DNA of 64,000 bases from Piromyces finnis finn (taxonomy: Eukaryota > Fungi > Neocallimastigomycota): assembly GCA_002104945.1 (NCBI GenBank), contig MCFH01000089.1:1-64000 (forward strand), read 5' to 3'. Below are positions 44,888-64,000 of this stretch, piece after piece. Under the pieces are notes generated by a model. That model was not told the DNA's origin. It ran no database searches and worked only from the letters and a program-made list of their open reading frames with translations. The position numbers were made by a program, and so were the translations under genes. The first letter of the stretch is position 1; every line of letters begins with the position of its first letter.

Positions 44888-45517
44888 TCACCATGAGATT
44901 GTGAACCCAAGTTCACAAGCAAGTTCTCGGGCCTTACAAAAGCATTTAGATTTTTTAAATTCATTGTATTCATAAATAGGATGTGGAACTTCTACCACCG
45001 ACGACTTTATTTCGTTAATGGACTTTCGAACCGAAATGGCTTTTGCACCAAATAGCATAAAAACAACAGGATGGTCATTTGAAATATAGTGTACTAAATT
45101 ATTAATAAAAGGTTCCCATAACAAATGATAATGATATGGTAAAGGATCAGCAATAGTTCGTGTAAAGCAAAAATTACATAAAAATATTCCATTATTTAGC
45201 CATTTATCTAAGTGATGATTGTATGGTCGCTGAAAAGTAGCTACTGTATCTTCTAAATTTTTGTAAATACGTTCCAATAATAATGGTGGATTACAGTTTT
45301 TAGATCCAAAAGCTATGTCTGAAATATCTCGAGTATTTTTATACGGCATATCACCTATCATTACAACTTTAACATCACTTAACTTGACATACTTGAAGAT
45401 TCCAAATACATCTTCCAGTGGTGGTGTAAAATAAGTATTTCTCAACTGATTATATATATGTAATACTAATTTAGAATTTTTTATAAAGAAATCGTCCCAA
45501 GACATGTGCGTCACCAC
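44888..45517 (-). CDS. ung: Uracil-DNA glycosylase family 1-like, divergent motifs
   Basis: VKVVMIGDMPY (GQDPY position), LDKWLNNGIFLCN, WEPF, VVFMLFGAKA, VVEVPHP. Confidence 0.88.
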   Translation of the reverse strand: MVTHMSWDDFFIKNSKLVLHIYNQLRNTYFTPPLEDVFGIFKYVKLSDVKVVMIGDMPYKNTRDISDIAFGSKNCNPPLLLERIYKNLEDTVATFQRPYNHHLDKWLNNGIFLCNFCFTRTIADPLPYHYHLLWEPFINNLVHYISNDHPVVFMLFGAKAISVRKSINEIKSSVVEVPHPIYEYNEFKKSKCFCKARELACELGFTISW

Positions 45518-46407
45518 TAATTTTATTTTCTTCCACTTTCACTCTTAACTTTTATTATTTATTAATTTTCTTAATATTTAATATTAATCAAAATTATAAA
45601 GATAAAGCTATCAATAAATATAATTTTTTATTTTAATTTTAATAAATTATTCATAAAACAAATCAAGGATAGGAGAAAGTTTTTATAAAATGGTTTTTCC
45701 AAAATTAAAATATTTTTGATATCTCAATACTAATCGTCATTTATTTTCATTTGACATTAATATAATAATGTAAAAAAAAAAGTTGCTATTATTTATGATT
45801 GGTTCATGAATTTAATGAAATAAAAATACTTTTTTTTATTTCTTTATAGTATTTTCATAGGAAATACTTTTGGAAATATATTATATTTTAAAAAATGAAA
45901 TATTAAATATATAATATTTCAATTATTTAAAATTTTTAGATATATATAATATAATAATATAATAATATAATAATATAATAATATTGTTTTTTTAAAAAAT
46001 ATTACATTATATAAAAGGTTTTTAAGGATATTTAGATTTAATTATCAAAGTGTCAATTATAAATTCAAATTAACAAATTTATATAATTATTTTTATTTTT
46101 ATTTTTTTTAAATATTATTAAATTTTAAATAATTTTATTAGTTTTACAATAATAATTAATAAGAGTGAATTATGTATTATTAAAGGAAAGATATACAGTA
46201 AATTTAATTTCATTGGTCATCATAAAAATAAAATAAAAAAAAAGTTATTATTCTATTTAAATAATAGTATAATAAACTATAATTTTATTGTTCTACATAC
46301 ATGTATTTCTATTTACTATAAATTATAAATAAAAACCAAATAAATTTTCAAATGTAATAAATATAAATTTTATAAATATAAATGTAAATATAAATATTTA
46401 ATACTTA

Positions 46408-47769
46408 TTAATTTTTTAACGACATTGAAAAAGCATATTCCAAAAATGAATCATCTATATCTTGGACGTTTGTAGAAAAAGGATAATAATAGATTTCATC
46501 ATTATTATAATCACGTACAAAACCATCTTTATCGGTAATAAGGTCTTCCATACTCTTGACCAGTTCTCTTTGCATGTAGCCTGTAGAAGAAGTGTTGAGA
46601 GAAGTTGAAATAATTCCAGCACGGCCTGATTTTGAATGTATAAATAGTTCCTTTGCTGTAAGTCCTTCGGAATAGGAACTCTTAATATAGCAACTTTGCA
46701 AAACGGCTTGAACTCCTACTGACATTAAAATTTGAATGACATTATCGATTTTCCCTTTCGAACCACTATTGACAATATTGGTTAGATTATTGCTAATCGA
46801 TTTAGATAAACTTTCTAATAATGGATAATTTTCTAAATAATACTTTCTTATTTTTTTTATTTCTTTACTATCTTTGTCTTGAGAGATAATAGAAGAATCT
46901 AAATTTGGTAGTTGTATAGCCGATAAAGTGTCAGGAATTTTTTCCAAAATGGATGTAAATTCATTTTCAATGCTTGGGTCTGGTATACAATCTGAAATGG
47001 AAATACTTATAATGTGAAATAAATTGTATTCATGAACCATACGTTGTACATCCCACATAAACTTCAAGTAAAAATCGTTACCATAGTGAGTAATAGAATT
47101 TAACAATACAGTTTGATTGGCACCATTAATAGTGTGAAGTAGAATACCATGGTCTACTAAATATTTATCACCCATTTTTAAAGTTAGTGATTTTGGAATC
47201 AACAATGAAAGTAAGTGCTTATATGGTATTTTATCGGTATTCATTCGTGATTTATAATATTTACAAAATATATTCCATTCCTTTTTTGATATTTTTAATC
47301 GTTTACATATGTTTTCGATAATATGGGGTTCGACAATACTGTGATCCTTTGTCATATTGTATAAGCCAGTTAAGGTATCTTGAATAAATTTAATCATGAG
47401 TGATCCATCCTTGAATGAACGGATATTATTTGAAATGTTCAATTTAGTAACCAATTCTTTTTTGGATTCTTCTCCCGGCAGCCAAAAAATATTCATTTCA
47501 TCCCCGTCAAAATCAGCCTGAAAAACACTGGCTATTAGAGGATTAATTTGGATGGTCCGACTGCTGCTGGGAAAGGAGCGAACAGATAATATAGAAGTAG
47601 TTTGGAGTGTAGGTTGCCTATTAATAATTACATAGTCATTTGGCTTATATCCGTATGGAATTAATTGATCCGTAAATTCTTTTGGTATCAATATTTTATC
47701 CAGGGGAATATTTATATTTGGCACGATGACACTACGAAGACAAAAGTTTTGTCTTTTAGCCAAACACAT
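46408..47769 (-). CDS. rpb1: Viral RNA polymerase largest subunit, N-terminal (A'-like) part: catalytic core to bridge helix
   Basis: AKRQNFCLRSVI, NRQPTL, QADFDGDEMN (catalytic Asp triad intact), IQDTLTG, SGSKG, bridge helix TSSTGYMQRELVKSMEDL. Stop about 43 codons after the bridge helix. Confidence 0.92.
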   Translation of the reverse strand: MCLAKRQNFCLRSVIVPNINIPLDKILIPKEFTDQLIPYGYKPNDYVIINRQPTLQTTSILSVRSFPSSSRTIQINPLIASVFQADFDGDEMNIFWLPGEESKKELVTKLNISNNIRSFKDGSLMIKFIQDTLTGLYNMTKDHSIVEPHIIENICKRLKISKKEWNIFCKYYKSRMNTDKIPYKHLLSLLIPKSLTLKMGDKYLVDHGILLHTINGANQTVLLNSITHYGNDFYLKFMWDVQRMVHEYNLFHIISISISDCIPDPSIENEFTSILEKIPDTLSAIQLPNLDSSIISQDKDSKEIKKIRKYYLENYPLLESLSKSISNNLTNIVNSGSKGKIDNVIQILMSVGVQAVLQSCYIKSSYSEGLTAKELFIHSKSGRAGIISTSLNTSSTGYMQRELVKSMEDLITDKDGFVRDYNNDEIYYYPFSTNVQDIDDSFLEYAFSMSLKN

Positions 47770-48570
47770 ACTTCTAAAAATTCCCGTTTTTCCCGATAAT
47801 ATTTGCTTAATAAATTTTTATCTGAATTTTCGGTAGTATCGGTGGAACTGTGGATTCCAAGGATTTTTTTATATAAATTGTATACCCTTAATCCATATCC
47901 ACTATAAGAAATGAGACTAGTACACTTTGAAACTGATGGTTTAAATCTAATAGTCTTATATACATGGATGTTATATTATTATGAATTATAATGTTGTTGG
48001 AATCCATAATGGAAGGCCTCATATTTATGGGTAATACAGGTATGTTTTTAAGAAATACTTTTAGTAATTTATTTTTTAGTTCGGGGTTTTCGCTGAAATC
48101 AAAAGTATGGATTAATTCATACATCTTAATAACACTAAACCATTGATTCCCAAATAAAAAGGCATATTCCGATTGAGTTTTATTTTCATTTTTTTTATTG
48201 GATTTACCATTAGAATTTGAATTGGTATTTTTTATGTAAATTTGTGTAAGGAAAATGAAGTACTTTTTATTCGGGTTCCACAGCATTTTGATTTAATATC
48301 GAGAGTAACATTATATTTTTTACAAATAGGACATATATGTGTAAGCTCTTTACATACTATATTTACAAATAATGGGTGGACAATGTATTGATAAATAGGA
48401 ATTCTTCCTAAATGACCAGGACATTCAATGACTTTTTTGCATTGCTTACATGGTAATTGTGGATCTAATATATAAGATGTGGTATTGTCAGTCAATTCAC
48501 TCTTATTTGAAATTAAAATAGCTAATCTTTCTACTTCTTCGTTACTATATAAATCAAATTTTAGATACAT
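47770..48570 (-). pseudogene. rpb1: Frameshifted N-terminal clamp region of the same RPB1 gene
   Basis: Zn motifs CKQCKKVIECPGHLG and CPICK...CCG, IPVLPINMRPSI, ILSGKTGIFRS. Three -1 frameshifts link it to ORF 46408-47769. Confidence 0.88.
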
Positions 48571-48902: not shown

Positions 48903-51513
48903 TTAATAATTATTAGTATTTGAAAATTCGACTACTTTAAGAAAAGAAGAATATTTATTTTGATATTTATTTAGTAATGGAAATTCTTTAATTGAATATT
49001 GATTTTTTAATTCAAATCCATTTTCCTTAAATATACTAATTACTTTTGCGGAATTGATAGCACATTCATAGTGATTGGTTACATTTGAATCAATGATGTT
49101 TGCATACATTATATTGTCACATTCTCCGTGGGAATATCTAAGACAACCTAACAAATAAGTTAATGATAATTTATCCAGTGTATTTATAATTTTATAATTT
49201 TCATTGTAATACATTTTCGATAAATTAATGATGGTGATGCTATATTTTCACTAAATAAAGAATAATCAAAAAATAAAACAATAAATGTTTTATTTATAAA
49301 ACTTTTAATATTTTTTAACATTCTTGATATATCAGTATAGGTCATATCATTTAGTGCGAAAAAGCATGTGGCAATATCAAAATGATCATTTAACGTAGCT
49401 TCTTGAATATTATTTGGAATAATTTTAATCCTATTTTTAATTTCTGAATTTGAAATTCTTTTATTTAAGTTTTTCAATTTTTCCGGGCTCGGTTCAACAC
49501 AAATAATTTTACGGAAATGATTCCACTTGTGTATATCACCCCATTGCCTGTACCGATATCTAATAAAGTTCCTCTAAATCACTTAAAATAGTTTGCTTTA
49601 TTATATTATGGTATTTACGCATAAAACATTGGATTTAGGTGAAAAAATATCAATATTGATTTTTTGATAGGAAGCCAATAAAACACTATTAAATGTATTT
49701 ATGCTATTTGATACAGTTTATCTTCGCGAACTTTAAAAATTTTTTATTATCTAAATCATACTCTATTATAAAATTTATTTTTTTATTTTTAATACGATGA
49801 TATTTAACTATCTTTTTGTTGATGGTACGCCTTCTATAATTTCTATTTTCTTTCTATAATAATACTTTTCAGTAGTAGTTGTACTATTGCGATTTCGCAC
49901 TTTAAACTTATTATACAATTTACATATATTTTTTATTTTTCTATTGATAAATTTAAAAGAGATTTTTTACTCTATATTCCCTAGCTAAAAAATAACGTCC
50001 ATTGAATTCGATTCTACTGTATTAACAGTTTTAATTTTATAAACTTTAGTATTTTCAAAATAGGTTGATGTCCACTGGTTATGACAATACCATCGTTTGG
50101 TGCGTATTTTCTAATTCGGATAATATAAATGTTTGAATATCTTGAAAATCTTACAGCATTTTATAATTTTTTACCTATAATTTTTTCAAATTTAAGGTAA
50201 TCTAAAAATTAAGAAGCTTACCTTTCTTTGTAAGAGTAATTTCTTAAATCAGATTCACTGTATAAAATTCAAAAGGAATAAAAGTATTATTAATAATTCA
50301 CAATCTAATATTAAATGGAAATCCTTCAATTTCTCTTATAAATTCTACTGAAAAATTTTCAGTTATACTATAATTTGATTATTAATAACAATTATTAATT
50401 TTCTGATACCATCGTTTTTGCTGATACGAAAAAAGATCTTTATTAACGTTTCAACATTTTTGAATATATGTCTAAGACGGTGTAATTGGTTTTTGAAATC
50501 GAAATTTGGTAAAAGCATAAATAAATAATCTATAATGAAACGGATATATCAATAATATGCATAACGTTATGAACATTTTAATCATGTCTAATCGTCATGA
50601 TAAATGTTTTTTGTGAAATCTATTTCGAATTGACTAATTTCATTGAAGTAGGTAACATCTACTTGAACATCTTGATTCATAATAAAAGACCGTCTTTTTT
50701 TCAGAATTGGTTCAGTAAAATTTAGAATAGTAATTTCTTTAGATTCTTTAATAAATTCTTTATTTGATTTATCATTACTATTACTATTACTATTACTATT
50801 ATTATTATTATTAATATTATCATTATCATTATCATTATCATTATATTATTATTATTACTATCATTAATATTAATATTATTATTATTATTATTATATTTAT
50901 TATTATTAATTTTAAATAATTTAAAATATTATCGGTATTTAAGGATGTTTCAATATTAAGTGTATTTTAAATACAAAATAATAAGCAGTTATTAATGTCA
51001 ATTTTTTTATATACTCTACATGTTATCAAAATCAATACTAATTTCTTTTTCACTATTTTCTGTAATATATCTAATTAACTTTGAATTTGAACTTTCACGT
51101 TTCTTATTTCCATTTAAATTATTATTATCATTATTGTCATTATCATATTTATTGTTATTGATATTGTCGTAGTTGATTTTATTAATATCGTTGGTATCAT
51201 GAATATCTTCACTAGTTTGTTCTTCCGTACTATTAAAAATGTATTGAGAATTACAAATTATTCTATATTTAGTAGATTGGTTTTCCTTCAATAAATGTTC
51301 AAAATATTGATGTGAATTATATTTTACAAATTCTTCTACATCTATATTCGTATATTTATTTTGAAGTCGAAATTCTAATTCAAAGGTTATATTTTTCGGA
51401 ATTAAAATGAGGATGTTGCTTTATAATCTCAATTTGATTATATATATTATTTAAAACTTCTTTTAAAGATTTTGTTTTTTTAAATATATACAATTGTTTG
51501 ATGGAATGTCCAT
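48903..51513 (-). pseudogene. Trifunctional viral mRNA capping enzyme (triphosphatase, guanylyltransferase, N7-methyltransferase), multiply frameshifted
   Basis: Hand translation gives FELEFRL (about 51370), KxDGIR (about 50415), LILDCEL (about 50300), PNDGIVI (about 50090), YKIKTVNT (about 50030), LLDIGTGNG-GDIHKW...ICVEP (about 49550) and FDIATCFFAL (ORF 49184-49477). Confidence 0.85.
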
Positions 51514-51965: not shown

Positions 51966-52586
51966 ATGAATACGACATACAGCGCCTTCCATCATCACCA
52001 ATAATACAGATTATTTAACAAAATTTATCGATAAATACAATGTATTTGCAAATATTGATAAACTGTTCGTAAAAAAAATCTATGATATAAAAGAATTTTT
52101 GGAAAAAACTATTCCGGAATTAAATCATTTGACCATTTCCATACCAGATACCAATTATGATCAATTGATGGTGAAAAAAGACTATTATTATATATCATTG
52201 ATTCAAGAGCCTTACGAAATAAAAATACCTGCACCTATTGATGGCGTATTTATAGTGGATGGTGTTGAAAAAGTTATTATATCACAGGAAATATTTTGTA
52301 CACCCTGTTTCATTTATAAAGATGATTGTATAGATACAAAGAATGTAATCAGTATGGGAAATTCCAATCGTTGGAAATGTTTACCGATTATAATTATATC
52401 AAGTATTTAAAAAGAGTGCTTGCTGAAAATGATCAAAATCTTCAATTAAAAATGTTCATACAAATTTTGATATCTATTATACCTTTTCAAATGAAGACCG
52501 CCAAAAAAAGCTTTCGAAAGTTAAAAGACATATTTATTTGGACATACGAGTTTATTTTTCTTTATTTTTTCAGTATTTGCGTGTAA
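51966..52586 (+). pseudogene. rpb2: Frameshifted N-terminal part of viral RPB2
   Basis: DGVFIVDGVEKVIISQE matches the conserved G.FI.NG.EKV.I.QE motif. Successive -1 shifts lead into ORF 52538-55291. Confidence 0.8.
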
Positions 52587-55291
52587 AAGGAATTAAATCT
52601 CACCAAAAACAAAATATTTCTCTGTTGTATATTCTTCACTATTTAAAACCGGAATTATCATTGAGTGAAATAAAGAATATTATCATTTCTACAGTTATTG
52701 GAAAGAATCTGCCAAAAAACATCGATATTATTATTCCGGAAGCATTACCGGAAGATACATTCGAAAGCATTATTTCTCATCGAAAGGAGTCAAAAGACGA
52801 AATAATAACTGTAATTAACAAAATAATAGATAGTTATTTTACTCCTGACTCGCTCCATCCTGTTGTTGATAATGAATCGGAAAATAAATCAGATTACAAT
52901 AATACTAAATTTTATACTTATTTGTCCATGGCAAGAGCTTTCTTTTGTGATACAAAAGAACATTATAATAATCGCATTGATACTTTCCCATACTCGATGT
53001 ATCGTTTTATTAAGTATTACGCGTTGGAAAATAAAAAAGTACCATTAAATAAATTCGTAAAAGATTTAAACTTTAAATTATTTAGCAATGTTAAGACAGG
53101 AATAGTTCGTTCTTACTTTAAAGATTATTCGGCAATCGCTGTACAAACCCTTAGCAAACGATCTTACTATGATAAATTGTCACATTTAAGGAGAGTTCAA
53201 ATTCCGATTAATACGGAAAGTGAAAATTCGGAATTGAGAATGTCTTATGATTATGGATATTTTTGTCCTTTTGAAACACCGGAATCTAAAGATGTAGGCC
53301 TTGTAAAATATTTTGGATTATCGGTATTGGTAGCTCCGGACTTTTCAATAGACAAAGCAATTTTACGCTCTTTCATTAATGATCACATGAATACTTGTTC
53401 AAAAGACTTACTGGAATATCCTGTATTATTGAATAGTAGGTTCATTGGTTTCACTTCCATTGACTTTGTCGAACATACCTACAAAGAATTGAAATTAACT
53501 TATCCATTTATTAGTTGCTTATTTGATAATGCTGCATTCTATTTATTTACGGATGAAGGAAGAATTATGAGACCGTTAAAAGTGTTAAAAAATGAAATTG
53601 AAATAGGCGTAAGATTTATTGATATTTCTGAATACAAATGTAATACTGAATATGTATATGAAGAAATAGATCCCAATTTTGTATTTGGTCTAATCAGCGC
53701 GCTTTCACCCTTTCCAGGAAACAATCATGTTCCAAGATTAACATTTCAAGCCGGTATGACAAAGCAATGTATGTCAAATGATAGTACGATATTTCAATTT
53801 AATGATAATTCAAGGAAATTAATTAATGCCCAACGTCCATTTTGTATGACTAAATTAGAATCTATTTTATCACGCAGACTTTGTCATTATCAACCTTTGA
53901 ATATTTTATTTAATGCTACCAATTATACCTTGAATAATTTATTTAATTTATTTACAAACATTGATGATGAAAATAATGGTAATGAATTTGAAATCAACGG
54001 TTTTAAAGAAAATAATAAAAAATATTTAGATGAAATTATAAAGGGTAATAATTTTGAAAGAAATATACAGATAAATAATGAAGAATTCAGAAATCGAATT
54101 AACCTTCTTACAAATATAAATATTGAAAAAGATGAAAATAACAGGAATAGTAATTCAACGACAACATCATCAACAATAACAAATAATAATACTTATCATA
54201 GATTTGGTGGTCAAAATGCAGTGGTAGCTATTATGGCATTTGGAAATAATCAAGAAGATAGTGTTATATTCAATGCCAAAAGTATAGAAAATGGTTTGTT
54301 TAGTAATATTAAATATAGATATCAATATATCTCCTACAATATTAAAGAAGAGATATTATTGAATATAAATGAAAATTACGAGAATGGATTGCCAAAACCA
54401 AATACACCGATTGCACAAGATTCATCGTGTTCCAATGAAATAATTTTTAAGAAATATAATCTTGTAAAGAATGAAGTTGAAGATATAGAAAATATTTTTA
54501 GAAAACCTGTTATTGTTGAGCACAGCAGTTTGTTTATTAAAGATGATATATGTTATTGTTGCGTGGAGGTACGCCATATGTATAAACCACAACAAGGAGA
54601 TAAGTTTGCTAGTCGCTATGCTCAAAAGGGAGTCATTGGTTCAATATTACCAGAAGATGTATTACCTAGAACAGAATATGGCATAATACCAGATATCATT
54701 GTTAATCCACATGCTTTTCCATCTAGAATGACAGTTGGTCATTTGATCGAAATGTACGTCGGTAAATGTATGGTGATTGATCCTCAAAAATTTGGAACGT
54801 TTTTTGATGCTTCCATAGAAAGTGATGATATAAAAAACTTCCGTTCAACATTCATTAAAAGTGGAATACCTATCATGGAAAAAATGATTGATCCAAAAAC
54901 AGAAATGAATATAGGATCCGCATTTGTAGGTGTTTGCTACTATACAGCTTTACAACATCAAGTGGAAGAAAAAATGTTTTATCGTATTACCGGAAATGTT
55001 AATTCTATTAGTAAGCAACCAACTGAAGGAAAGGCTAATAATGGTGGACTAAGAATAGGTGAAATGGAAAAGGACGCTTTAGTAGCACACGGTGCTAATG
55101 CAATATTAAAAGATATGTTTCGAAATAACACTGACATTATGGAAATTAAATATTGTACTACTTGTCATTCAATAAGTACATCCGAAAAATGTTGCAATTC
55201 AGAAACAAAATCTCTAACAATTTCAAATAGTTTTAATATCATGAATTCATATTTAAACTCCATTAATATACAAACAACGATGTATGAATGA
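52538..55291 (+). CDS. rpb2: Viral RNA polymerase second-largest subunit (main ORF)
   Basis: SHLRR, CPFETPESKDVGLVK, NNHVPRLTFQAGMTKQ, GNNQEDS, GDKFASRYAQKG, PDIIVNPHAFPSRMTVG, GGLRIGEMEKD, C-terminal Zn ribbon. Confidence 0.95.
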   Translation: MDIRVYFSLFFQYLRVKGIKSHQKQNISLLYILHYLKPELSLSEIKNIIISTVIGKNLPKNIDIIIPEALPEDTFESIISHRKESKDEIITVINKIIDSYFTPDSLHPVVDNESENKSDYNNTKFYTYLSMARAFFCDTKEHYNNRIDTFPYSMYRFIKYYALENKKVPLNKFVKDLNFKLFSNVKTGIVRSYFKDYSAIAVQTLSKRSYYDKLSHLRRVQIPINTESENSELRMSYDYGYFCPFETPESKDVGLVKYFGLSVLVAPDFSIDKAILRSFINDHMNTCSKDLLEYPVLLNSRFIGFTSIDFVEHTYKELKLTYPFISCLFDNAAFYLFTDEGRIMRPLKVLKNEIEIGVRFIDISEYKCNTEYVYEEIDPNFVFGLISALSPFPGNNHVPRLTFQAGMTKQCMSNDSTIFQFNDNSRKLINAQRPFCMTKLESILSRRLCHYQPLNILFNATNYTLNNLFNLFTNIDDENNGNEFEINGFKENNKKYLDEIIKGNNFERNIQINNEEFRNRINLLTNINIEKDENNRNSNSTTTSSTITNNNTYHRFGGQNAVVAIMAFGNNQEDSVIFNAKSIENGLFSNIKYRYQYISYNIKEEILLNINENYENGLPKPNTPIAQDSSCSNEIIFKKYNLVKNEVEDIENIFRKPVIVEHSSLFIKDDICYCCVEVRHMYKPQQGDKFASRYAQKGVIGSILPEDVLPRTEYGIIPDIIVNPHAFPSRMTVGHLIEMYVGKCMVIDPQKFGTFFDASIESDDIKNFRSTFIKSGIPIMEKMIDPKTEMNIGSAFVGVCYYTALQHQVEEKMFYRITGNVNSISKQPTEGKANNGGLRIGEMEKDALVAHGANAILKDMFRNNTDIMEIKYCTTCHSISTSEKCCNSETKSLTISNSFNIMNSYLNSINIQTTMYE

Positions 55292-55294
55292 ATA

Positions 55295-55869: not shown

Positions 55870-57660
55870 TTAATTTAATATTCGATATCCTATAATAGAT
55901 TCAATTGAACGATTTGTATCGGTTGTCATTACATTATTTATCCTGATGTTATATTTTGTTAAATCCATGCGAAAATCTTCTAAACTGTAATTAATAGCTC
56001 TGGTTGAAACATATTGTTTAAACCAATCTTTATATAAAGAATAAAGTTCATCGATAGGAATGGCAAAGGTATCATTTTTATCAATTATATACTTTTCCAA
56101 GAATCGAGCTATATGGTCGCATCTCATAATGAAATGTTTTGTGGCGTGAACTACACTTTGAGGTATCTCCAAATTTGTATAGTCTTTTTGATAATTTTGA
56201 ATCAAAATATGGATTAATGCTTCAGCATAACTTTGAACATGGGAACCTTGCCACATTGTATTGGCATGCTTAATGGAGGTATTGCTAATGTTTTGGGTGG
56301 AGGATAATATTGAAATATTCATCTTGTTCACAAAACGTTGAGTGAAAGGAATTACCAAGATTCTATCAATTAAGGCATTGTCTAAATTAGATATAGTTAA
56401 TTTATCGTTAGTATTGATAATCGGTAATAAGTCAACATAAACAGTTTGTAAATCTTTATATAAAGATCTAGTCTTTATATACCCGACATTTCCTGTAATG
56501 GCTTTAGCATCACCGGTGATATTAATGGATCGAGCATCTGGTTCTTCACATATTGAAATTCTACAATTATTAAGATCCATCATATGAGGACTAGGTTTAT
56601 CGGCACTTGTAGACTTTCCTAGAAATAAGGATACATTTGGAGTGGCAGCATAATCTCCAAGAGCAAGACGTAACATATTGGTAAAAGTAGTTTTACCATT
56701 ACGACCAGATCCGATGAAAAATAGAATGGAACGTAATTTATTACCAAGAGTAAGGGTAGAAGCGATCACCTTCAAAACATATTCTATTAAGTCATCCTCA
56801 ACGAAAATATCTCTTAGAAATTGATAAACTTCTTCCATTTTATCTTTGTTATCATTGTAATAATTGTAATTGGTTGATTTCAGACAAAAGTCATTAGGAC
56901 GTCCAGGACGTGGAGCATTGATACCAAAATCATAAACACAATCTTCGAATCTTAATACATTACCTTTATCAATGCATTTAATAAAATCATTTGTATAAAA
57001 GAAAGTTTCGAGTTGTTCCAAGTGATTGTAAATTATGGTATGATTAGTAAAGAAATTCATTAATTCGTTAGTGATACCATCTAAGGATATATTGTATTCG
57101 AGGCACATGTTCTTAATATTTCCGGTTAAATATAAATTTATTTCTTTAGCTATATCGTAAGAACTAATTGATTCCCATCCATTAAGATTATAGAAAAATT
57201 TATACCATTCTTTGTCACTATATACAAAATATCCCAAATTTAAAATAATAAATATATTGAATATGGAATGATTTGTTAATACGGTTTTAGTGTAATATTT
57301 TTTTATAGTCAATAATCGAGCAATATTTACAACGCGTAATCCGAATTCGTCAATACAACTATAAATTATGTCGATGATGTCATTTTTGAATTTTTTATTT
57401 TCCAAGCCATTATTGTTTCCTTCAATCTTTATATTATTTAATCGTTTATTAAGAATACCAATTTCTACATTTGTCACTGTATTTTTTTCCTCTTCTTTAT
57501 CAACTCTTACATTATATTTCTCTAGGTAATTAGCAATTAAAGCATAAGATTTTGATTTTTTAGTTTCATCATGTTTTAAGAGGATAAATAAAAAGTATAC
57601 AATTGGATGGTATAAGTTAATACCATTTGTATCTATTTCTTGAGTATTTAATGACACCAT
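55870..57660 (-). CDS. D5-like SF3 helicase (D5_N plus helicase), no recognisable primase domain
   Basis: Walker A FFIGSGRNGKTTF, Walker B RISICEEPD, motif C IINTN, D5_N-like FEDCVYDFG...RPGRPNDF. Confidence 0.9.
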   Translation of the reverse strand: MVSLNTQEIDTNGINLYHPIVYFLFILLKHDETKKSKSYALIANYLEKYNVRVDKEEEKNTVTNVEIGILNKRLNNIKIEGNNNGLENKKFKNDIIDIIYSCIDEFGLRVVNIARLLTIKKYYTKTVLTNHSIFNIFIILNLGYFVYSDKEWYKFFYNLNGWESISSYDIAKEINLYLTGNIKNMCLEYNISLDGITNELMNFFTNHTIIYNHLEQLETFFYTNDFIKCIDKGNVLRFEDCVYDFGINAPRPGRPNDFCLKSTNYNYYNDNKDKMEEVYQFLRDIFVEDDLIEYVLKVIASTLTLGNKLRSILFFIGSGRNGKTTFTNMLRLALGDYAATPNVSLFLGKSTSADKPSPHMMDLNNCRISICEEPDARSINITGDAKAITGNVGYIKTRSLYKDLQTVYVDLLPIINTNDKLTISNLDNALIDRILVIPFTQRFVNKMNISILSSTQNISNTSIKHANTMWQGSHVQSYAEALIHILIQNYQKDYTNLEIPQSVVHATKHFIMRCDHIARFLEKYIIDKNDTFAIPIDELYSLYKDWFKQYVSTRAINYSLEDFRMDLTKYNIRINNVMTTDTNRSIESIIGYRILN

Positions 57661-58194: not shown

Positions 58195-58779
58195 TTAAAT
58201 AAATTCGTATTTAGTTTTAATTTCATGAGAAAGTGCATCTTTGCTAATTTCAACATTATCGAGTAATATCTCAATAATTTCACGTTTTGAATATTTGTTT
58301 TCTTCAGCATAAGTAATAATGTATTCCTTGTCGTCAATATTTAATGGTAATACAAAGAAATGATAATATTCTGGCAATTTTTGTAGCTTGATATCCTTTT
58401 TAATTTCCTTGTAAGAAATTTCTAAAGCTAATTGAATATTTGGTGTGAATATAATTGGTGCACTTTCAAAGATTTCCTTATTACTAGTATTTTTAAGTGG
58501 TGGTTTGTAACAAAACGTATTACTTAAGTTGCTTGTGATATGAGGTTTTAATGAACTAATAATATCTGAAGGGAATTGGTCGTAATTTGAGTCAGCGAGT
58601 AGTTTGTACATTAATTCAATTGTTTTTGTTAATTTCTTAACAGTAAAAGATTTATCTTTTTCTTTTATTGAAACTTGCTTACTTATCGTATTTAAAACAA
58701 GAGCAATAGCATCTGTAATTGCAGTACGCTTTAGTTCGTTTAATCTCTTTTGAGATAAATTCTTTATAATATCTGACAT
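58195..58779 (-). CDS. Hypothetical protein (viral block)
   Basis: 194-aa intronless ORF with normal amino-acid complexity; no motif recognised. Confidence 0.6.
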   Translation of the reverse strand: MSDIIKNLSQKRLNELKRTAITDAIALVLNTISKQVSIKEKDKSFTVKKLTKTIELMYKLLADSNYDQFPSDIISSLKPHITSNLSNTFCYKPPLKNTSNKEIFESAPIIFTPNIQLALEISYKEIKKDIKLQKLPEYYHFFVLPLNIDDKEYIITYAEENKYSKREIIEILLDNVEISKDALSHEIKTKYEFI

Positions 58780-58786
58780 TTCCTTG

Positions 58787-58817
<31 letters not shown>

Positions 58818-59244: not shown

Positions 59245-59685
59245 ATGAATATAGAATCTTCTAAGATTACTCATCAATTAAAAGGAAACTGTTTCAGTTA
59301 TGATAAAAGTATACATCAGCAAATTCACTATAAATTGTTAAGTACTACTACTGGAAAGTATAATAATTCACTATACATTAATGAATTTATTAACTTTTTG
59401 AAGATTCATGTATTTCAACATAGTGAATCCAATGAAAACGAAAATCGATTCAGTAAATTAAACATTCCTATGCTATATTTAATTTTTATTATTAAAAATT
59501 ATGAATATCCGAACTTCCATTCCAGTGACATTAATAATACTAATTATAGAGATAAAATTAATGAACTTTTAAAAAACATTATAAGAATGGACAAGGATGA
59601 GAGTTACATGGAATATGCTTTTGATATTATACGCTATTTATATATATATAATTTAATTGCTAATGATAAATATATTTCATTATAA
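59245..59685 (+). CDS. Hypothetical protein (viral block)
   Basis: 146-aa ORF ending 79 bp upstream of PolB on the same strand. Confidence 0.55.
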   Translation: MNIESSKITHQLKGNCFSYDKSIHQQIHYKLLSTTTGKYNNSLYINEFINFLKIHVFQHSESNENENRFSKLNIPMLYLIFIIKNYEYPNFHSSDINNTNYRDKINELLKNIIRMDKDESYMEYAFDIIRYLYIYNLIANDKYISL

Positions 59686-59764
59686 TTATATAATTATAAT
59701 TGATTTTTTATTTTTAATACATATTTTAGTAAACACATAATTTTATAGAACACATATTTTTATT

Positions 59765-62700
59765 ATGGCATTAACCTGTTTTATCTATAATTGGGAATTA
59801 TTCATTAACGATGATTCTCCCATTATTATCGGATTTGGTTATAACGAAAATAATAATAAAATAGCAATTGTTATTAAAGATTTTCCTTTGTTTAAATATT
59901 CTGAGTCTTTAAATATAAGTTTCAATTATATTAATAATAAAAAAGAAATTTTACAAAAAAAGTTATTGCGTCATTATCTTGATGGGGAAAAGAAAATTTA
60001 TAAAGTGTATTTTAAAAAATATTCGGAATATGCTTCATTTCATTCGACACTGTTTAATGTTGATATAGTGTCATCTTTTCTTTCAACTCAAAATCTAGAT
60101 ACCATTGGATGGGTTTATTCAAATATATATCGAAAAAATGAATCAGAACAATATACCACTTTTAATATGGAATACATCATCAGCTATAAAGATATTCATA
60201 CAAAAAATGTCGACCATTATCCAGATCCTTCCATATTGTCATTTGATATTGAATGTATGTCACACGATTTTGAATCATTTCCAAATTGCTATTTATATAA
60301 TGATTTTATATCTACTATTAGTATTGTATATCATTATAAAGATATTCAAAAAAATATTGCTATTTGTGTAAAATACAAAAACAAAAATAATATAGTAAGT
60401 CAATCACAATTAAATGAAATAGATCCTTCATTCATATCCTTTATAGATATTGAAAAGTTTAATAATTCATGTAAAGATTTTATATTTTTTGATGAGAAAA
60501 TTAAAAATGAAAACAATAATGAAAATTTATTACTTAATAATAATAAAGATGATTCATGTTCTACAGAATTAGGTAAATTAGCTGATATTAAGAGCAATGT
60601 AGTAGTTGCTGAAGAAAATAATAAAGTGAATAATGTAAATAGTAATATAAATGATATAAATGATATAAATGATATAAATGATATAAATGATATAAGTGAT
60701 ATAAATGATATAAATAATTTAAATAATTATGATTCAAGTCATACTAATTTAGTTGACAGAATGATTAATATTAATAAATCTACATCAGTTAGTATGGATA
60801 TAAATGATTCTCTTTTTAGTAATAATATCCCTACTACTACTACTATATTATCTTCTTTTTCTAATAATAATAACAACAATCATATTAAAAATAATAGTAA
60901 TAATGAGGTGGAAAATAGATACAATAGACTAAAAAAAATTTTAAGTAACAATAATTGCACATATAATTCCAGTACTAAAAATAGATTTAATAGGTTAAAA
61001 AATATGATTAATAATAGTTTGAGAAATGAAAATTTGATTAAAAATTCACTAAATTGTACTACAAAGAAAGAAGAAAAAGAAAAGGAAGAAGAAAGTTCTT
61101 TAGAATCTATAGAAGAATTTATTGTGAAACATGAAAAATCTAAAAAAGATAAACTTCTAAAAAGCGATATTTTAAAGGATCCATATGATATTATATTTGT
61201 TGAATCTGAATATGATTTAATTTGCGAGTTTTTTAATCAAATTCGGAAATTAGATCCAGACTTAATTATTGGGTATAATACCTTTGGATTCGATTATAAA
61301 TATTTGGCACAAAGAGCTGGTATGTATTCGATTATTGATCAAAAGAGTTCTCCTTTTAAAGCTAATAGAATTTTAAATATGCCAACAAAATTTATGACTA
61401 TCTCCTCAAGTAATGAAGTTGAACTTAAGATACCGGGTAGAATTGCAATAGATATTTTCAAATATGCCAAATCTTTAAATATGCCATCGGCTAGTTTAAA
61501 TTATGTTTCTGAGCAATTATTAAATAAGCATAAAATTGATTTACCCTACAAAGATATGTTTTATTTGATTTACGAGAACACCGACGACTCTTTGAATAAA
61601 GTGGCGATGTATTGTATTATGGATTCCATCCTAACTCTGGAAATATTTAATGTTTCATATCAATGGATCCAGCTCTTGGAGATTGCTAAAACCTCAAGAA
61701 TCCGTGTGGATGAAGTTTATAAAAATGGTCAGAGTAAAAAGTTTGCAAACTTATTATACAAATATTGCTACGACAATGATATTTGTATAGATATTGATAA
61801 TTCGAACATAGTTAGTTATAAAGGTGCTACTGTTATTGAACCATTATCTGGTGTATACAACTACTGTACTATGCTAGATTTCACAAGTTTATATCCAAGT
61901 GTCATCATTACTCATAATATATGCTATACAACATTAATTAACCCTAATGATATTGGGAATTATTCCGAAGATGAATATCATAAGATTGATATAGGCAATA
62001 AATTATACTATTTTACAAAACGACATGTTGGCATCTTACCTCGAATGATGAAGCTGTTGCTTTCAGAAAGAATTCGTTATAAAAACATGATGAAAAAGGC
62101 ATCTGGTTCAGATTATATTATATACGATAAACGTCAATACGCATTGAAGATACAAGCTAACTCTATTTATGGATGTCTTGGTTCAAGTTCCTTAAAGTAT
62201 TTAAGATTCTTACCAGGTGCTGAATGTACCACAGGAATGGGAAGAAACTACTTGAATAAAACTATTGCCTTAATTTGTGAAAATACCAAATTTAGAGTAA
62301 TTTATGGTGATACAGATTCATGTCTTATTGAATATAAGAAGGATATAGAAAGGGAAAGTAATGGAAAAAATCTTGATACTAAAGATTTTGATGTAAATAA
62401 ATTTATTGAAGATTGCAAATTAGTAGCGGAATATGTTACCAATCAATTACCGGAAGGAATGCATTTAAAATATGAAAACACATTCAAAAGAATGCTAATT
62501 CTATCCAAAAAAAAGTATTGTGGTGTTTTAGCAAATACATCGGAATTGTACATTAAAGGGATAGATATTATTAAAAAAAATACTTGTGTTTTTATTAGAG
62601 ATTATTATAAAATATTTTTATATATGATTCTTTTTGATTATCCGGAAAAGCAGATACGTTATAAAGTATTGGAAATGAAAAATAAATTACTTTCTGGGGA

Positions 62701-63061
62701 TGTACCATTAGAAAAGTTATTAATGAAAATGACCATTGGACCAAAGTATGTAAATAAATCCTATTATGTTTTACTATTTGTTAATAATCATAAAATGTAT
62801 AACTTAGATTACAAAATCGGTGAAAAAATTGATTATATAATTATAGATACCAATTCATTCTCATTTAATAAGAATTCAAAATTATTAGGAGACAAAATGA
62901 TATCTTTAGACTTGTATAAAAATATATGTGAAAAGGCTACTAAAAATAAAAATATTAATAAACCTAAGTTAGATTATCATTATTATTACTACCATTATGT
63001 AGAAACAGGGTTTAAAAGTTTACTAAAAGTTTTGAATACCAATATTAGCGATTTATTATAA
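59765..63061 (+). CDS. polB: Family B DNA polymerase (viral type) with proofreading domain and Asn-rich insertion
   Basis: ExoI SFDIEC, ExoII IIGYNTFGFD, ExoIII YCIMDS, motif A LDFTSLYPS, motif B ALKIQANSIYG, motif C YGDTDS, KKKYCG. Confidence 0.97.
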   Translation: MALTCFIYNWELFINDDSPIIIGFGYNENNNKIAIVIKDFPLFKYSESLNISFNYINNKKEILQKKLLRHYLDGEKKIYKVYFKKYSEYASFHSTLFNVDIVSSFLSTQNLDTIGWVYSNIYRKNESEQYTTFNMEYIISYKDIHTKNVDHYPDPSILSFDIECMSHDFESFPNCYLYNDFISTISIVYHYKDIQKNIAICVKYKNKNNIVSQSQLNEIDPSFISFIDIEKFNNSCKDFIFFDEKIKNENNNENLLLNNNKDDSCSTELGKLADIKSNVVVAEENNKVNNVNSNINDINDINDINDINDISDINDINNLNNYDSSHTNLVDRMININKSTSVSMDINDSLFSNNIPTTTTILSSFSNNNNNNHIKNNSNNEVENRYNRLKKILSNNNCTYNSSTKNRFNRLKNMINNSLRNENLIKNSLNCTTKKEEKEKEEESSLESIEEFIVKHEKSKKDKLLKSDILKDPYDIIFVESEYDLICEFFNQIRKLDPDLIIGYNTFGFDYKYLAQRAGMYSIIDQKSSPFKANRILNMPTKFMTISSSNEVELKIPGRIAIDIFKYAKSLNMPSASLNYVSEQLLNKHKIDLPYKDMFYLIYENTDDSLNKVAMYCIMDSILTLEIFNVSYQWIQLLEIAKTSRIRVDEVYKNGQSKKFANLLYKYCYDNDICIDIDNSNIVSYKGATVIEPLSGVYNYCTMLDFTSLYPSVIITHNICYTTLINPNDIGNYSEDEYHKIDIGNKLYYFTKRHVGILPRMMKLLLSERIRYKNMMKKASGSDYIIYDKRQYALKIQANSIYGCLGSSSLKYLRFLPGAECTTGMGRNYLNKTIALICENTKFRVIYGDTDSCLIEYKKDIERESNGKNLDTKDFDVNKFIEDCKLVAEYVTNQLPEGMHLKYENTFKRMLILSKKKYCGVLANTSELYIKGIDIIKKNTCVFIRDYYKIFLYMILFDYPEKQIRYKVLEMKNKLLSGDVPLEKLLMKMTIGPKYVNKSYYVLLFVNNHKMYNLDYKIGEKIDYIIIDTNSFSFNKNSKLLGDKMISLDLYKNICEKATKNKNINKPKLDYHYYYYHYVETGFKSLLKVLNTNISDLL

Positions 63062-63578
63062 CCCCTAATGAATAAATTTAAAAATAATTACTTTATATTT
63101 TATCTATTAAATTTTATTTATTTAATTATTTAAAATTTTAATATTTTAATAATTTTTTAAAAATTTATTTTTATTTAAATATATACATATATACATGTAT
63201 ATGTTTATAATTTTTAAAATGAAAAAAAAAAGCACACACACAAATAAAATATTTATAAATGTATAATATAATAATAAATAATTATGTAATTTATGTATAA
63301 ATAAAGATTTATTTTATATTTTTTTTTTAAAAAAAAAAAGATAAATATCAATTATTAAATTCCATTTAAAATAAAATAAATTGTATATACAAAATGTTTA
63401 AATTTAATTACTAATATATATAGTGATATAGTATTATTTACATTTATTTAAATAATAATAATGATATTACAAAAATTAAATTTATTTAATTCTATATGAA
63501 AATAAATTTTAAAAAAATCATAATAGAAAACAATAAATTAAATAATGTAATAGGTGAATTACAAGTTAATATATATTA

Positions 63579-64000
63579 TTACTTTTTATCATTTTCAACA
63601 ATCTCTTCATCTTTTTCGTTAAATGTATTATTATTAAAATTATCATTGTATATTCCAGTAATTAATTTTGAAGATATAGATGTTAATCTATCTTCGACAC
63701 CATAAAATATATTTTGAATTACGCTATAAGGGTCCTCAAAAGATAATTGAGATATAAAAGAATAATTACCTTTTTTCATTCCAAAACGGGACATTGGCAA
63801 AATTGTGTTATCACGACACATAAAATTAGTTAATAATTCTGTATGTTGATTATTATAAGATGAAGAAGAATCGACATTAACAATTCTTTTTAATTGCATT
63901 AAAATATTCTTCTTACGTAATTCAAAATCAATGTCCATTGAATTACCATATACAATATATCTAGACCTATTCTTGTCAATGTATTTGTTATTAAAAAGAG
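63579..64000 (-). CDS. RPB1 C-terminal (A''-like) subunit, 5' end beyond the window
   Basis: The frame is open to 64000. YNNQHTELLTNFM...ILPMSRFGM...SQLSFEDPYSVI...DRLTSISSKLITG aligns with RPB1 YVNYRHLALLCDVM...ITRHG...RCSFEE...D.L.GVSENIMLG. Confidence 0.82.
   Translation of the reverse strand, partial: LFNNKYIDKNRSRYIVYGNSMDIDFELRKKNILMQLKRIVNVDSSSSYNNQHTELLTNFMCRDNTILPMSRFGMKKGNYSFISQLSFEDPYSVIQNIFYGVEDRLTSISSKLITGIYNDNFNNNTFNEKDEEIVENDKK

What the first reader, a model, noticed from the sequence alone, without database searches (positions are those of the whole stretch)
44888..64000. Giant-virus core machinery embedded in an anaerobic-fungus genome
Within 19 kb there is a nearly complete cytoplasmic-virus toolkit: PolB, D5-type SF3 helicase, UDG, both large RNA polymerase subunits and a trifunctional capping enzyme (all seen as motifs). 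This set is the established Nucleocytoviricota core. Fungal nuclei do not use a fused TPase-GTase-MTase, and the RNAP motifs are far from host Pol II (QADFDGD, RYAQKG). Endogenous giant viruses are reported in some early-diverging fungi, but whether this lineage is described is unknown to me. No major capsid protein or A32 ATPase is in the window, so it could be a provirus or a capsid-less virus-like replicon (inference).
Basis: partly seen in the sequence, partly recalled or inferred. Interest (0 to 1): 0.92.

Follow-up and report, generated by a model that had tools for sequence, protein, structure and literature searches.

The report
Decayed giant-virus-like insert in gut fungus
The right end of this window is one partly broken, chromosomally inserted copy of a small giant-virus-like element in the gut fungus Piromyces finnis, a kind already published in 2020, although complete relatives of about 42 kb with a circular map and no recognisable capsid gene turn up in public assemblies.

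Summary
The window is Piromyces finnis contig MCFH01000089.1, bases 1-64000. From 44.9 kb it carries a uracil-DNA glycosylase, a split RNA polymerase largest subunit, a capping enzyme gene, RPB2, a D5 helicase and PolB.

The interpretation also holds, but it is not new. Gong, Zhang and Han 2020 (PMC7017919) described these endogenous "fundsalphavirus" elements in P. finnis and four other anaerobic fungi.

- The block extends beyond the reported coordinates, right to at least 73 kb and probably left to about 32-34 kb.
- In this copy RPB1-N, RPB2 and the capping gene are broken. The other core genes are intact.
- A second copy 54 kb downstream shows no breaks in the eight genes I could see whole.
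- Copies differ at dS 0.3-1.4 with dN/dS 0.05-0.3, which suggests repeated insertion of replicating lineages.
- Intact relatives form contigs of about 42.3-42.5 kb with a circular map in many Logan assemblies. They encode replication and early-transcription genes and a shared AAAWTGA upstream motif, but no detectable capsid protein or packaging ATPase.

Novelty: already known. The 42-kb unit is the part worth following up.

The parts
44888..45517 (-). Uracil-DNA glycosylase (family 1 type), intact
   Evidence: PDB phmmer E 4e-22 to E. coli and human UNG. It is 91% identical to the 207-aa gene of the 42-kb relatives. Cluster members are named 'DNA glycosylase [Piromyces finnis]'. It has GDMPY where UNG has GQDPY.
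46408..48570 (-). RNA polymerase largest subunit, N-terminal gene (RPB1-N). Broken: 3 frame changes, no in-frame stop.
   Evidence: Pfam Rpb1 domains 1-4 and the start of domain 5. QADFDGD at 47500-47520. The intact homologue is 717 aa. Break counts.
48903..51513 (-). Capping enzyme gene (guanylyltransferase, OB domain and N7-methyltransferase, with a putative N-terminal triphosphatase). Heavily broken: 4 frame changes and about 29 in-frame stops by homology-guided count; at least 18 breaks as a lower bound.
   Evidence: Methyltransferase piece. KNDGIR at 50402-50419. Intact homologues of 808-872 aa carry collinear capping-enzyme domains. Break counts.
52003..55291 (+). RNA polymerase second-largest subunit (RPB2). 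Broken: 2 frame changes, no in-frame stop.
   Evidence: Pfam Rpb2_6 E 1.8e-53, plus Rpb2_7 and Rpb2_3. RYAQKG at 54614-54631. The intact homologue is 1074 aa. Break counts.
55870..57660 (-). D5-type primase-helicase (SF3), intact
   Evidence: Pfam D5_N. Walker A GSGRNGKT. It is 93% identical to the 592-aa gene of the 42-kb relatives.
58195..58779 (-). Conserved 194-aa protein of unknown function, intact
   Evidence: Syntenic in every copy at 69-92% identity, dN/dS 0.10-0.23. No Pfam or PDB match.
59245..59685 (+). Conserved 146-aa protein of unknown function, intact
   Evidence: Syntenic in every copy at 58-83% identity, dN/dS 0.17-0.31. No Pfam or PDB match.
59765..63061 (+). Family B DNA polymerase, intact, with a variable Asn/Lys-rich insert
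   Evidence: Pfam DNA_pol_B E 3.7e-67 and exonuclease domain. YGDTDS at 62303-62320. 197 bits to yeast Pol delta. Paralogues in P. finnis and Neocallimastix.
63579..64000 (-). RNA polymerase largest subunit, C-terminal gene (RPB1-C). It runs past the window end to contig base 65111 and is intact there (510 aa).
   Evidence: Pfam Rpb1 domain 5, profile positions 66-264. It is a separate gene in all copies.
43948..44619 (-). Chitin-binding protein. Accessory gene of the element's variable arm (probable).
   Evidence: Pfam Chitin_bind_1. The domain is 53-57% identical to the chitin-binding genes of the ENA and Logan elements.
42181..42894 (+). Member of the element's 227-aa gene family
   Evidence: tblastn 45% identity, E 6e-40 to the 227-aa gene beside the SNF2 helicase in the 42-kb unit.
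36628..40017 (-). 1129-aa ORF. Its N-terminus resembles the 1526-aa protein of the 42-kb unit. Membership probable.
   Evidence: tblastn 47% identity over about 90 residues, E 9e-13. No Pfam family.
34474..35184 (-). Second member of the 227-aa gene family
   Evidence: tblastn 40% identity, E 3e-38.
35788..36660 (+). Ankyrin-repeat gene; membership uncertain
   Evidence: Pfam Ank families. AAAWTGA motif 89 nt upstream.
40177..41373 (-). Ankyrin-repeat gene; membership uncertain
   Evidence: Pfam Ank families. AAAWTGA motif 116 nt upstream.
19237..32344 (.). Nested Ty3-type LTR retrotransposons (neighbour). They separate clearly host-like genes (up to 16.8 kb) from the element's left arm.
   Evidence: Pfam RVT_1, RNase H, rve and gag. 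Two LTR pairs, each 100% identical over 300 nt. Related copies truncate or interrupt other element copies.

Best explanation
The block is one integrated, partly decayed copy of a small Nucleocytoviricota-related element, the 'fundsalphavirus' of Gong et al. 2020. It sits in a chromosome-type contig of Piromyces finnis.

What the complete relatives look like (shown): units of about 42 kb with a circular map and about 22 genes.
- Replication module: PolB, D5 primase-helicase, UDG.
- Transcription module: RPB1 split into two genes, RPB2, a TFIIS-type zinc ribbon, a guanylyltransferase-methyltransferase capping enzyme, an SNF2 helicase of the D6/D11 type, and a 728-aa protein that looks like the large subunit of the poxvirus-type early transcription factor.

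How it probably works (inferred): the element's own polymerase, guided by that factor, starts at AAAWTGA-type promoters about 45-75 nt upstream of the genes and caps its own mRNA. PolB, D5 and UDG copy the DNA.

The copy in the window (shown): it cannot supply this machinery itself, because RPB1-N, RPB2 and the capping gene are disrupted. A second copy 54 kb downstream is open in the eight genes I could see whole.

Origin of the copies (inferred): they diverged under strong purifying selection. They therefore most likely come from repeated insertions of replicating lineages, not from duplication and neutral decay inside the genome.
For: - Identity of the window: with a sequence identity check.
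- Gene identifications.
- Not host enzymes.
- Same gene order in P. finnis contigs 83, 69 and 89 (twice), in ENA and JGI metagenome contigs, and in Logan assemblies.
- Integration: a Ty3 element 90% identical to the window's truncates the copy on contig 83, and a retrotransposon fragment interrupts RPB1-C on contig 69. The LTR pairs are young.
- Break counts. Copy 2 is open.
- Selection: dN/dS 0.05-0.31 at dS 0.3-1.4 for five genes, including copy 1 against copy 2.
- Circular map: the two ends of the 42285-bp contig abut with a 9-nt overlap inside other contigs. Contigs of 42285-42490 bp start at different points of the same map.
- 728-aa protein: the top two BFVD matches, and eight of the top 30, are early-transcription-factor large subunits of pithovirus-like, marseillevirus-like and Solivirus genomes (E down to 4e-8).
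- Promoter motif: 12 hits in 20 upstream windows of 100 nt, against 85 hits in 83 kb. Fisher p 9e-7, with 2 antisense hits. It is partly conserved in other lineages and matches the early-promoter core quoted in PMC5294985.
- Prior description: PMC7017919.
Against: - I built no phylogeny with named giant-virus references. Placement rests on PMC7017919 and on fold matches from a low-confidence model (pLDDT 49).
- The frame changes in RPB1-N and RPB2 (3 and 2) could be homopolymer errors in a long-read assembly of very AT-rich DNA. I did not check the sequencing platform, and I had no reads to test this. Only the capping gene's decay is beyond such doubt.
- A circular map is also what an assembler gives for a tandem array, so an extrachromosomal form is not shown.
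- The left boundary is not fixed. Genes at 32-44 kb share only family-level similarity with the 42-kb unit.
- Low dN/dS among genomic copies could also reflect selection in the host.
- No expression data.
Confidence: 0.85

Rival explanations
1. The block is a fragment of a much larger conventional giant virus of 100 kb or more. The conserved 42-kb map is then only a repeat-bounded or collapsed part, and the capsid, packaging ATPase and late genes lie elsewhere.
For: - All established Nucleocytoviricota that encode an RNA polymerase have much larger genomes (own knowledge).
- PMC7017919 reports some capsid-like and A32-like hits in fungal genomes.
- I see only 73 of the 127 kb of this contig.
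Against: - At least three contigs of 42.3-42.5 kb with different start points close on themselves, with every ORF intact and short spacers.
- None of the roughly 25 proteins has a capsid or A32 Pfam hit, or a Walker A motif other than D5.
- The two copies on contig 89 lie 54 kb apart, about one unit plus insertions.
Confidence: 0.2
2. The lineage is a capsid-less, plasmid-like replicon derived from a giant virus. It persists as an episome or tandem array and occasionally integrates, with no virion stage.
For: - No capsid protein, packaging ATPase or VLTF3 was recognisable in the complete 42-kb map.
- The candidate 728-aa protein looks like a transcription factor subunit, not a capsid protein.
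- The map is circular.
Against: - About ten proteins remain unassigned: 145, 194, 227, 268, 282, 469, 723, 927-1725 and 1526 aa.
- A divergent double jelly-roll would escape Pfam and PDB sequence searches.
- The large, polymorphic lectin and chitin-binding protein suggests contact with fungal cell walls from outside.
Confidence: 0.25
3. The genes were captured by the host and are now domesticated, maintained for a fungal function rather than as a virus-like element.
For: - dN/dS is well below 1 among copies within one genome.
- Many ORFs are intact in several copies.
Against: - Key subunits are broken in copy 1.
- Copies are truncated by retrotransposons.
- Whole-block synteny is retained, with the element's own promoter motif.
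- Nearly identical intact units circulate in many metagenome runs.
Confidence: 0.05
4. The join between host-like genes and the element is an assembly chimaera or contamination.
For: Between the host-like genes (up to 16.8 kb) and the element there is a 13-kb nest of repeats (19.2-32.3 kb). That is a typical place for misjoins.
Against: - At least four loci on three contigs of the same assembly carry the block.
- Retrotransposons of the same families lie inside or against other copies.
- Base composition matches the host, 18-28% GC.
- Homologues occur in five other anaerobic-fungus genomes.
- PMC7017919 argues the same point.
Confidence: 0.03

Closest known systems
Endogenous 'fundsalphavirus' elements of fungi (Gong, Zhang and Han 2020, PMC7017919)
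   Same: Same host species is listed (Piromyces finnis). Same shared genes: PolB, D5, D6/D11-like SNF2 helicase, SAM methyltransferase, RPB2, and RPB1 split into N and C genes. Retrotransposons lie nearby, and some copies carry stops and frameshifts.
   Different: The paper names RPB5, which I could not identify. As far as I read it, it does not report the UDG, the guanylyltransferase part of the methyltransferase protein, the TFIIS ribbon, the VETF-large-like protein, the promoter motif, the intact second copy or the 42-kb circular-map relatives.
Pithovirus-like and marseillevirus-like giant viruses (Pimascovirales)
   Same: The best fold matches of the 728-aa protein are their early-transcription-factor large subunits. 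The published PolB tree puts the fungal elements next to Pithovirus. Marseilleviruses have circular genomes and AT-rich promoter motifs (PMC7192143 abstract).
   Different: Their genomes are hundreds of kilobases and encode capsid and morphogenesis genes. The fungal unit is about 42 kb with none recognised. PolB identity to anything outside the fungal lineage is about 25%.
Poxvirus-type early transcription system (VETF small and large subunits, early promoter, capping enzyme)
   Same: It works alike on paper. It has an SNF2/D6-like helicase, a VETF-large-like protein, an AAAWTGA motif that fits the AAAANTGAAAA early core quoted in PMC5294985, a multisubunit polymerase and a fused capping enzyme.
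   Different: No sequence-level match to poxvirus proteins beyond weak family hits (MCEL_GT_NTPase E 0.006; rpo132 93 bits). Promoter use and factor binding are inferred, not shown.
Giant endogenous viral elements and Mycodnaviridae of zoosporic fungi (PMC13533422)
   Same: Giant-virus-related DNA inside, or persisting with, early-diverging fungi.
   Different: Mycodnaviridae belong to the Imitervirales with far larger genomes. That paper does not mention anaerobic gut fungi. No close PolB relative of that kind was returned.
Yeast cytoplasmic linear 'killer' plasmids (pGKL2 type; own knowledge, not tested here)
   Same: A small fungal DNA element with its own DNA polymerase, RNA polymerase, helicase and capping enzyme and no capsid.
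   Different: Those use a protein-primed polymerase and have linear genomes with terminal inverted repeats. Here the polymerase is of the Pol delta-like DNA_pol_B type with a D5 primase-helicase, and the map is circular.

Membership tests
Nucleocytoviricota (core gene set) | Family B DNA polymerase distinct from cellular Pol delta | tested here: met
   Pfam E 3.7e-67. Only 197 bits to yeast Pol delta. Nearest non-fungal relatives about 25% identical.
Nucleocytoviricota (core gene set) | D5-type primase-helicase | tested here: met
   D5_N domain and Walker A. No primase domain was recognised by Pfam.
Nucleocytoviricota (core gene set) | Two large RNA polymerase subunits | tested here: met
   Rpb1 domains 1-5 across two genes, and Rpb2 domains 3, 6 and 7. 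About 211-221 bits to archaeal Rpo2 and Pol II Rpb2, 106 bits to the ASFV RPB2 homologue and 93 bits to vaccinia rpo132.
Nucleocytoviricota (core gene set) | mRNA capping enzyme (triphosphatase, guanylyltransferase, methyltransferase) | tested here: inconclusive
   The guanylyltransferase, OB and N7-methyltransferase hits are collinear in two copies, but each falls below Pfam's cut-off. KxDGxR is present. The triphosphatase rests on a motif only. The structure model failed at pLDDT 30.
Nucleocytoviricota (core gene set) | Early transcription factor: SNF2 D6/D11-type helicase and A7-type large subunit; TFIIS | tested here: inconclusive
   SNF2, DEAD and Helicase_C domains, and the TFIIS zinc ribbon (E 1.5e-9), are met just right of the window. 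The large subunit rests only on Foldseek hits from a pLDDT-49 model.
Nucleocytoviricota (core gene set) | Double jelly-roll major capsid protein | tested here: not met
   No Pfam capsid hit in the window, the right extension or any protein of the 42-kb unit. The 469-aa and 728-aa candidates have no PDB match. A very divergent fold is not excluded.
Nucleocytoviricota (core gene set) | A32-type packaging ATPase | tested here: not met
   D5 is the only protein of 25 with a Walker A motif. No Pfam hit.
Nucleocytoviricota (core gene set) | Phylogenetic placement among reference giant viruses | not testable with these tools
   No named reference set could be fetched. I rely on the published PolB, RPB1 and RPB2 trees in PMC7017919.
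Fundsalphavirus endogenous elements (PMC7017919) | Found in the listed hosts | tested here: met
   The window is P. finnis GCA_002104945.1 contig MCFH01000089.1. The species is named in the paper.
Fundsalphavirus endogenous elements (PMC7017919) | Shared genes: PolB, D5, SNF2 helicase, SAM methyltransferase, RPB2, RPB1-N and RPB1-C | tested here: met
   All are present in the published combination.
Fundsalphavirus endogenous elements (PMC7017919) | RPB5 gene | tested here: inconclusive
   No Rpb5 hit in any ORF. The conserved 194-aa and 146-aa proteins have no Pfam or PDB match.
Host replicative and transcriptive polymerases (Pol delta, Pol I/II/III) | High similarity to fungal orthologues | tested here: not met
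   About 200 bits to the yeast enzymes over about 1000 residues. No ordinary eukaryotic Pol delta appears among the hits.
Protein-primed linear plasmids and polinton-like elements | Protein-primed PolB, terminal inverted repeats, retroviral-type integrase | tested here: not met
   The polymerase is of the DNA_pol_B plus exo1 type. The map is circular. The only rve integrases belong to the Ty3 retrotransposons.

The most novel reading that the evidence does not exclude
The window's block is a dead copy of a lineage that still circulates among anaerobic gut fungi as a genome of about 42 kb with a circular map. That genome carries a full giant-virus replication and early-transcription apparatus but no recognisable capsid protein or packaging ATPase. 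To my knowledge this would be by far the smallest polymerase-encoding relative of the giant viruses, either capsid-less or with an unrecognised virion. One chromosomal copy in P. finnis also looks intact over every gene I could see.
Probability: 0.35. Interest if true: 0.85.

Novelty: already known. Interest (0 to 1): 0.5.

Why it matters
As reported, the finding repeats a published result: giant-virus-like DNA is endogenous in anaerobic gut fungi.

It still matters for two reasons. First, no DNA virus of these fungi, which are important fibre degraders in herbivores, has been characterised. Second, complete units with a circular map would put a lower bound of about 42 kb on a genome that keeps its own multisubunit RNA polymerase, early transcription factor, capping enzyme and replication genes. 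That bears on how giant viruses grew or shrank, and on whether such a core can persist without a capsid module.

The locus also offers a natural comparison between a decayed copy and an apparently open copy on one contig.

Tried and rejected
- **Locus searches with PolB.** The single-protein search of IMG/VR and JGI contigs used low-complexity peptide patterns and returned only 25-29% identical polymerases. Repeating it with an alignment gave 26 IMG/VR loci, all at or below 34% identity. The lineage is therefore not catalogued there by these patterns.
- **Is the 728-aa protein the capsid protein?** It has no relatives outside the lineage (31 hits) and no PDB match. Its fold matches point to an early-transcription-factor large subunit instead. 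I rejected the capsid idea.
- **Capping enzyme structure.** The model had pLDDT 30, and its fold search returned unrelated hits. I used neither.
- **Profile searches against PDB.** The 268-, 194-, 146- and 469-aa proteins matched nothing.
- **Egoviruses.** These are gut-associated relatives of poxviruses, which I considered as the source. Their preprint links them to ciliates and parabasalids and does not mention fungi. I tested no sequence link.
- **Origin of the Logan runs.** A literature search for the SRR accessions found nothing, so I do not know the sample type.
- **Host polymerase reading.** Rejected.

- Scripts printed coordinates of open segments inside genes later found to be broken. 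I used such pieces as separate queries. None of these coordinates is repeated in this report.
- The short generic catalytic-motif patterns were typed from general knowledge.
- No tool received it as a comparator.
- The consensus lines that the alignment tool prints were not used.

Full report
**Where the window comes from.** The PolB gene model of the window is found once in the public collection, on Piromyces finnis GCA_002104945.1 contig MCFH01000089.1 (127,315 bp). Window coordinates equal contig coordinates 1-64000 (sequence identity checked). The DNA is 14-33% GC throughout, with no compositional step at the element.

**Checking the observation.**
- Pfam finds PolB (59765-63061, +), a D5_N helicase (55870-57660, -) and RPB2 (+). 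RPB1 domains 1-4 plus the start of domain 5 lie on several open pieces of the minus strand at 46.4-48.6 kb. The rest of RPB1 domain 5 is on a separate minus-strand ORF that starts at 63579 and runs off the window.
- The ORF at 44888-45517 has no Pfam hit. It matches family-1 uracil-DNA glycosylases in the PDB at E 4e-22.
- Between RPB1-N and RPB2 only a methyltransferase piece is recognisable in the window.
The only soft spot is the 'trifunctional' label of the capping enzyme.

**The capping enzyme.** Intact homologues exist: 808 aa in the Logan assemblies and 872 aa in a second P. finnis copy.
- They show a methyltransferase domain (E 6e-9). Upstream of it, in order, come sub-threshold hits to mRNA_cap_enzyme or MCEL_GT_NTPase (E 0.006), mRNA_cap_C (E 0.0006) and, in one copy, mRNA_G-N7_MeTrfase (E 1.7e-5).
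- KTDGIR is invariant at residues 308-313, and ELEFR lies near the N-terminus.
- The best PDB profile hits are human cap N7-methyltransferase (E 0.05).
- I accept the guanylyltransferase-methyltransferase assignment. The triphosphatase remains inferred.
- The structure model was useless (pLDDT 30).

**Not host genes.**
- RPB2 scores about 211-221 bits against archaeal Rpo2 and Pol II Rpb2, 106 bits against the ASFV RPB2 homologue and 93 bits against vaccinia rpo132.
- PolB scores 197 bits against yeast Pol delta.
- The large-database search returned only anaerobic-fungus and gut-metagenome proteins at 46-88% identity, then unrelated polymerases at about 25%.

**Extent and neighbours.**
- To the right (contig 64-73 kb) the block continues with RPB1-C (510 aa), a 730-aa protein, a TFIIS zinc ribbon, a 279-aa protein and an SNF2 helicase.
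- To the left of the UDG lie seven ORFs. These are a chitin-binding gene, two members of a 227-aa family, a 1129-aa ORF whose N-terminus resembles a 1526-aa protein of the complete relatives, two ankyrin genes and a 528-aa ORF. The first four tie this arm to the element family. The rest are uncertain.
- At 19237-32344 sit two nested Ty3-type retrotransposons with identical LTR pairs.
- Clearly host-like genes (CBM1 protein, SNF transporter, Stealth protein) lie at or below 16.8 kb.

**Other copies.**
- P. finnis contigs 83 and 69 carry the same gene order at 76-86% DNA identity. The former is cut at D5 by a Ty3 element 90% identical to the window's. The latter is interrupted in RPB1-C by a retrotransposon fragment.
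- Contig 89 itself has a second copy in the same orientation, 54 kb downstream (contig 99916-121715).
- Cluster listings show at least six P. finnis UDG loci and at least six D5 loci.
- Homologues occur in Neocallimastix lanati, N. californiae, N. 'constans', Anaeromyces robustus, Piromyces sp. E2 and Orpinomyces.

**State of the copy in the window.**
- Measured against the intact relatives, RPB1-N has 3 frame changes and RPB2 has 2.
- The capping gene has 4 frame changes and about 29 in-frame stops. A homology-free lower bound gives at least 18 breaks.
- UDG, D5, the 194- and 146-aa genes, PolB, RPB1-C, the 730-aa gene, TFIIS and the 279-aa gene are unbroken.
- The few frame changes might be long-read homopolymer errors. 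The capping gene's decay cannot be explained that way.
- Copy 2 has full-length ORFs for all eight genes visible whole.

**Selection.** For five genes, all pairwise comparisons among P. finnis copies and metagenome lineages give dN/dS 0.05-0.31 at dS 0.3-1.4. This includes copy 1 against copy 2. The copies therefore diverged while their proteins were in use. That fits repeated insertion of replicating lineages better than in-situ duplication.

**Complete relatives.**
- The D5, UDG and 723-aa proteins of one lineage sit on contigs of 42,285-42,490 bp in many Logan assemblies.
- The contigs start at different points of one gene map.
- The two ends of contig SRR25667310_978 are adjacent, with a 9-nt overlap, inside contigs from other runs. 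They are separated by about 80 nt in a length variant. The end of SRR25667315_2293 maps beside its predicted start.
- The map is therefore circular. A circular or permuted genome, a concatemer and a tandem array would all give this result.
- All ORFs are intact and closely spaced.
- Gene order: lectin and chitin-binding protein (927+546, 1179+492 or 1725 aa), 227, 282, SNF2, 268, TFIIS, 728, RPB1-C, PolB, 145, 194, D5, RPB2, capping enzyme, RPB1-N, UDG, 53, 469, 1526, 37, 723.
- The window is the mirror image of the UDG-to-PolB segment.

**Searching for a capsid module.**
- No protein of the unit has a capsid or A32 Pfam hit. Only D5 has a Walker A motif.
- The conserved 728-aa protein has no relatives outside the lineage.
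- Its model is poor (pLDDT 49). Even so, the top two BFVD matches, and eight of the top 30, are early-transcription-factor large subunits of pithovirus-like, marseillevirus-like and Solivirus genomes (E down to 4e-8).
- The equally poor capping-enzyme model gave only unrelated hits. That makes the 728-aa result more credible.

**Promoter-like motif.** AAAWTGA occurs 12 times in the 20 sense-strand windows of 100 nt upstream of the unit's genes, mostly 44-77 nt from the ATG. Over 83 kb of both strands it occurs 85 times (Fisher p 9e-7), with 2 antisense hits. It recurs upstream of D5 and the 145/146-aa gene in every lineage checked. It fits the early-promoter cores quoted in PMC5294985.

**Literature.**
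- PMC7017919 screened 1,006 fungal genomes and defined fundsalphaviruses in Neocallimastix californiae, Piromyces finnis, Anaeromyces robustus, Piromyces sp. E2, Pecoramyces and others.
- It listed D5, a D6/D11-like helicase, a SAM methyltransferase, RPB2, RPB5 and the split RPB1 as shared genes. It noted nearby retrotransposons, stops and frameshifts, and placed PolB next to Pithovirus. No other paper in the library uses the name.
- The Mycodnaviridae and egovirus papers do not cover anaerobic fungi.

**Verdict.** The finding is real and correctly interpreted, but already published. New here are:
- the fuller gene assignment (UDG, guanylyltransferase, TFIIS, VETF-large-like protein);
- the wider extent of the element;
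- the break census;
- the apparently open second copy;
- the selection signal;
- the promoter motif;
- the 42-kb relatives with a circular map and no recognisable capsid module.

Noticed in passing
contig MCFH01000089.1 99916-121715 (L019), outside the window: A second copy of the core block lies on the same contig, in the same orientation, about 54 kb downstream. All eight genes visible whole are full-length ORFs, unlike the copy in the window.
   Followed up: partly
Logan contigs of 42285-42490 bp (L015, L017, L018, L020-L032): Intact relatives give a circular map of about 42.4 kb in many runs of one accession series. The sample type is unknown and no paper cites the runs.
   Followed up: partly
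L024 4603-9665, L025 452-5595, L033 452-5629: The unit's large lectin and chitin-binding gene (B-lectin, ricin-B and chitin-binding domains) differs in structure between runs. It appears as two ORFs of 927+546 aa, two of 1179+492 aa, or one of 1725 aa. The contigs tend to break there.
   Followed up: no
window 19237-32344: Two nested Ty3-type LTR retrotransposons, each with an LTR pair 100% identical over 300 nt (19237/31725 and 24416/30488). These are very recent insertions at the edge of the element's left arm.
   Followed up: partly
upstream of genes in L017 and L024; window upstream of 48570, 57660 and 59245: The AAAWTGA motif is enriched about 6.7-fold in sense orientation within 100 nt upstream of the element's genes. 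It matches published giant-virus early-promoter cores (PMC5294985).
   Followed up: partly
window 46408-48570 and 63579-64000 (continuing to 65111): RPB1 is split inside Pfam domain 5: the N gene ends at profile position about 53-55 and the C gene starts at about 66. The split is the same in every copy and lineage, and the two genes lie on the same strand about 15 kb apart. From my own knowledge this resembles the archaeal A'/A'' split; I did not test that.
   Followed up: partly
window 45341-45355 (-): The UDG has GDMPY where E. coli UNG has GQDPY in the aligned active-site loop, so the aspartate position is shifted. Whether it is an active glycosylase or has another role is unknown.
   Followed up: no
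window 48903-51513 (-): The capping gene is much more decayed (at least 18 breaks) than its flanking genes (2-3 breaks). It also contains a stretch similar to a simple-repeat family seen at 10.0-10.5 kb and on contig 83. I have no explanation for the uneven decay.
   Followed up: no
window 60540-60900 (+), inside PolB: PolB has an Asn/Lys-rich low-complexity insert that varies in length between copies and does not align across lineages. The deposited gene model starts after it (755 aa against an ORF of 1098 aa).
   Followed up: no
L008 and L009 (JGI metagenome contigs): A more distant PolB lineage (59% identical) sits alone beside pectate-lyase and CBM1 genes, with none of the other element genes. 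It looks like a solitary relic in another anaerobic fungus.
   Followed up: no
window 10045-10545: Three overlapping ORFs on both strands lie over a low-complexity repeat. The repeat recurs on contig 83 (L002 about 22.8-23.1 kb) and inside the decayed capping gene.
   Followed up: no
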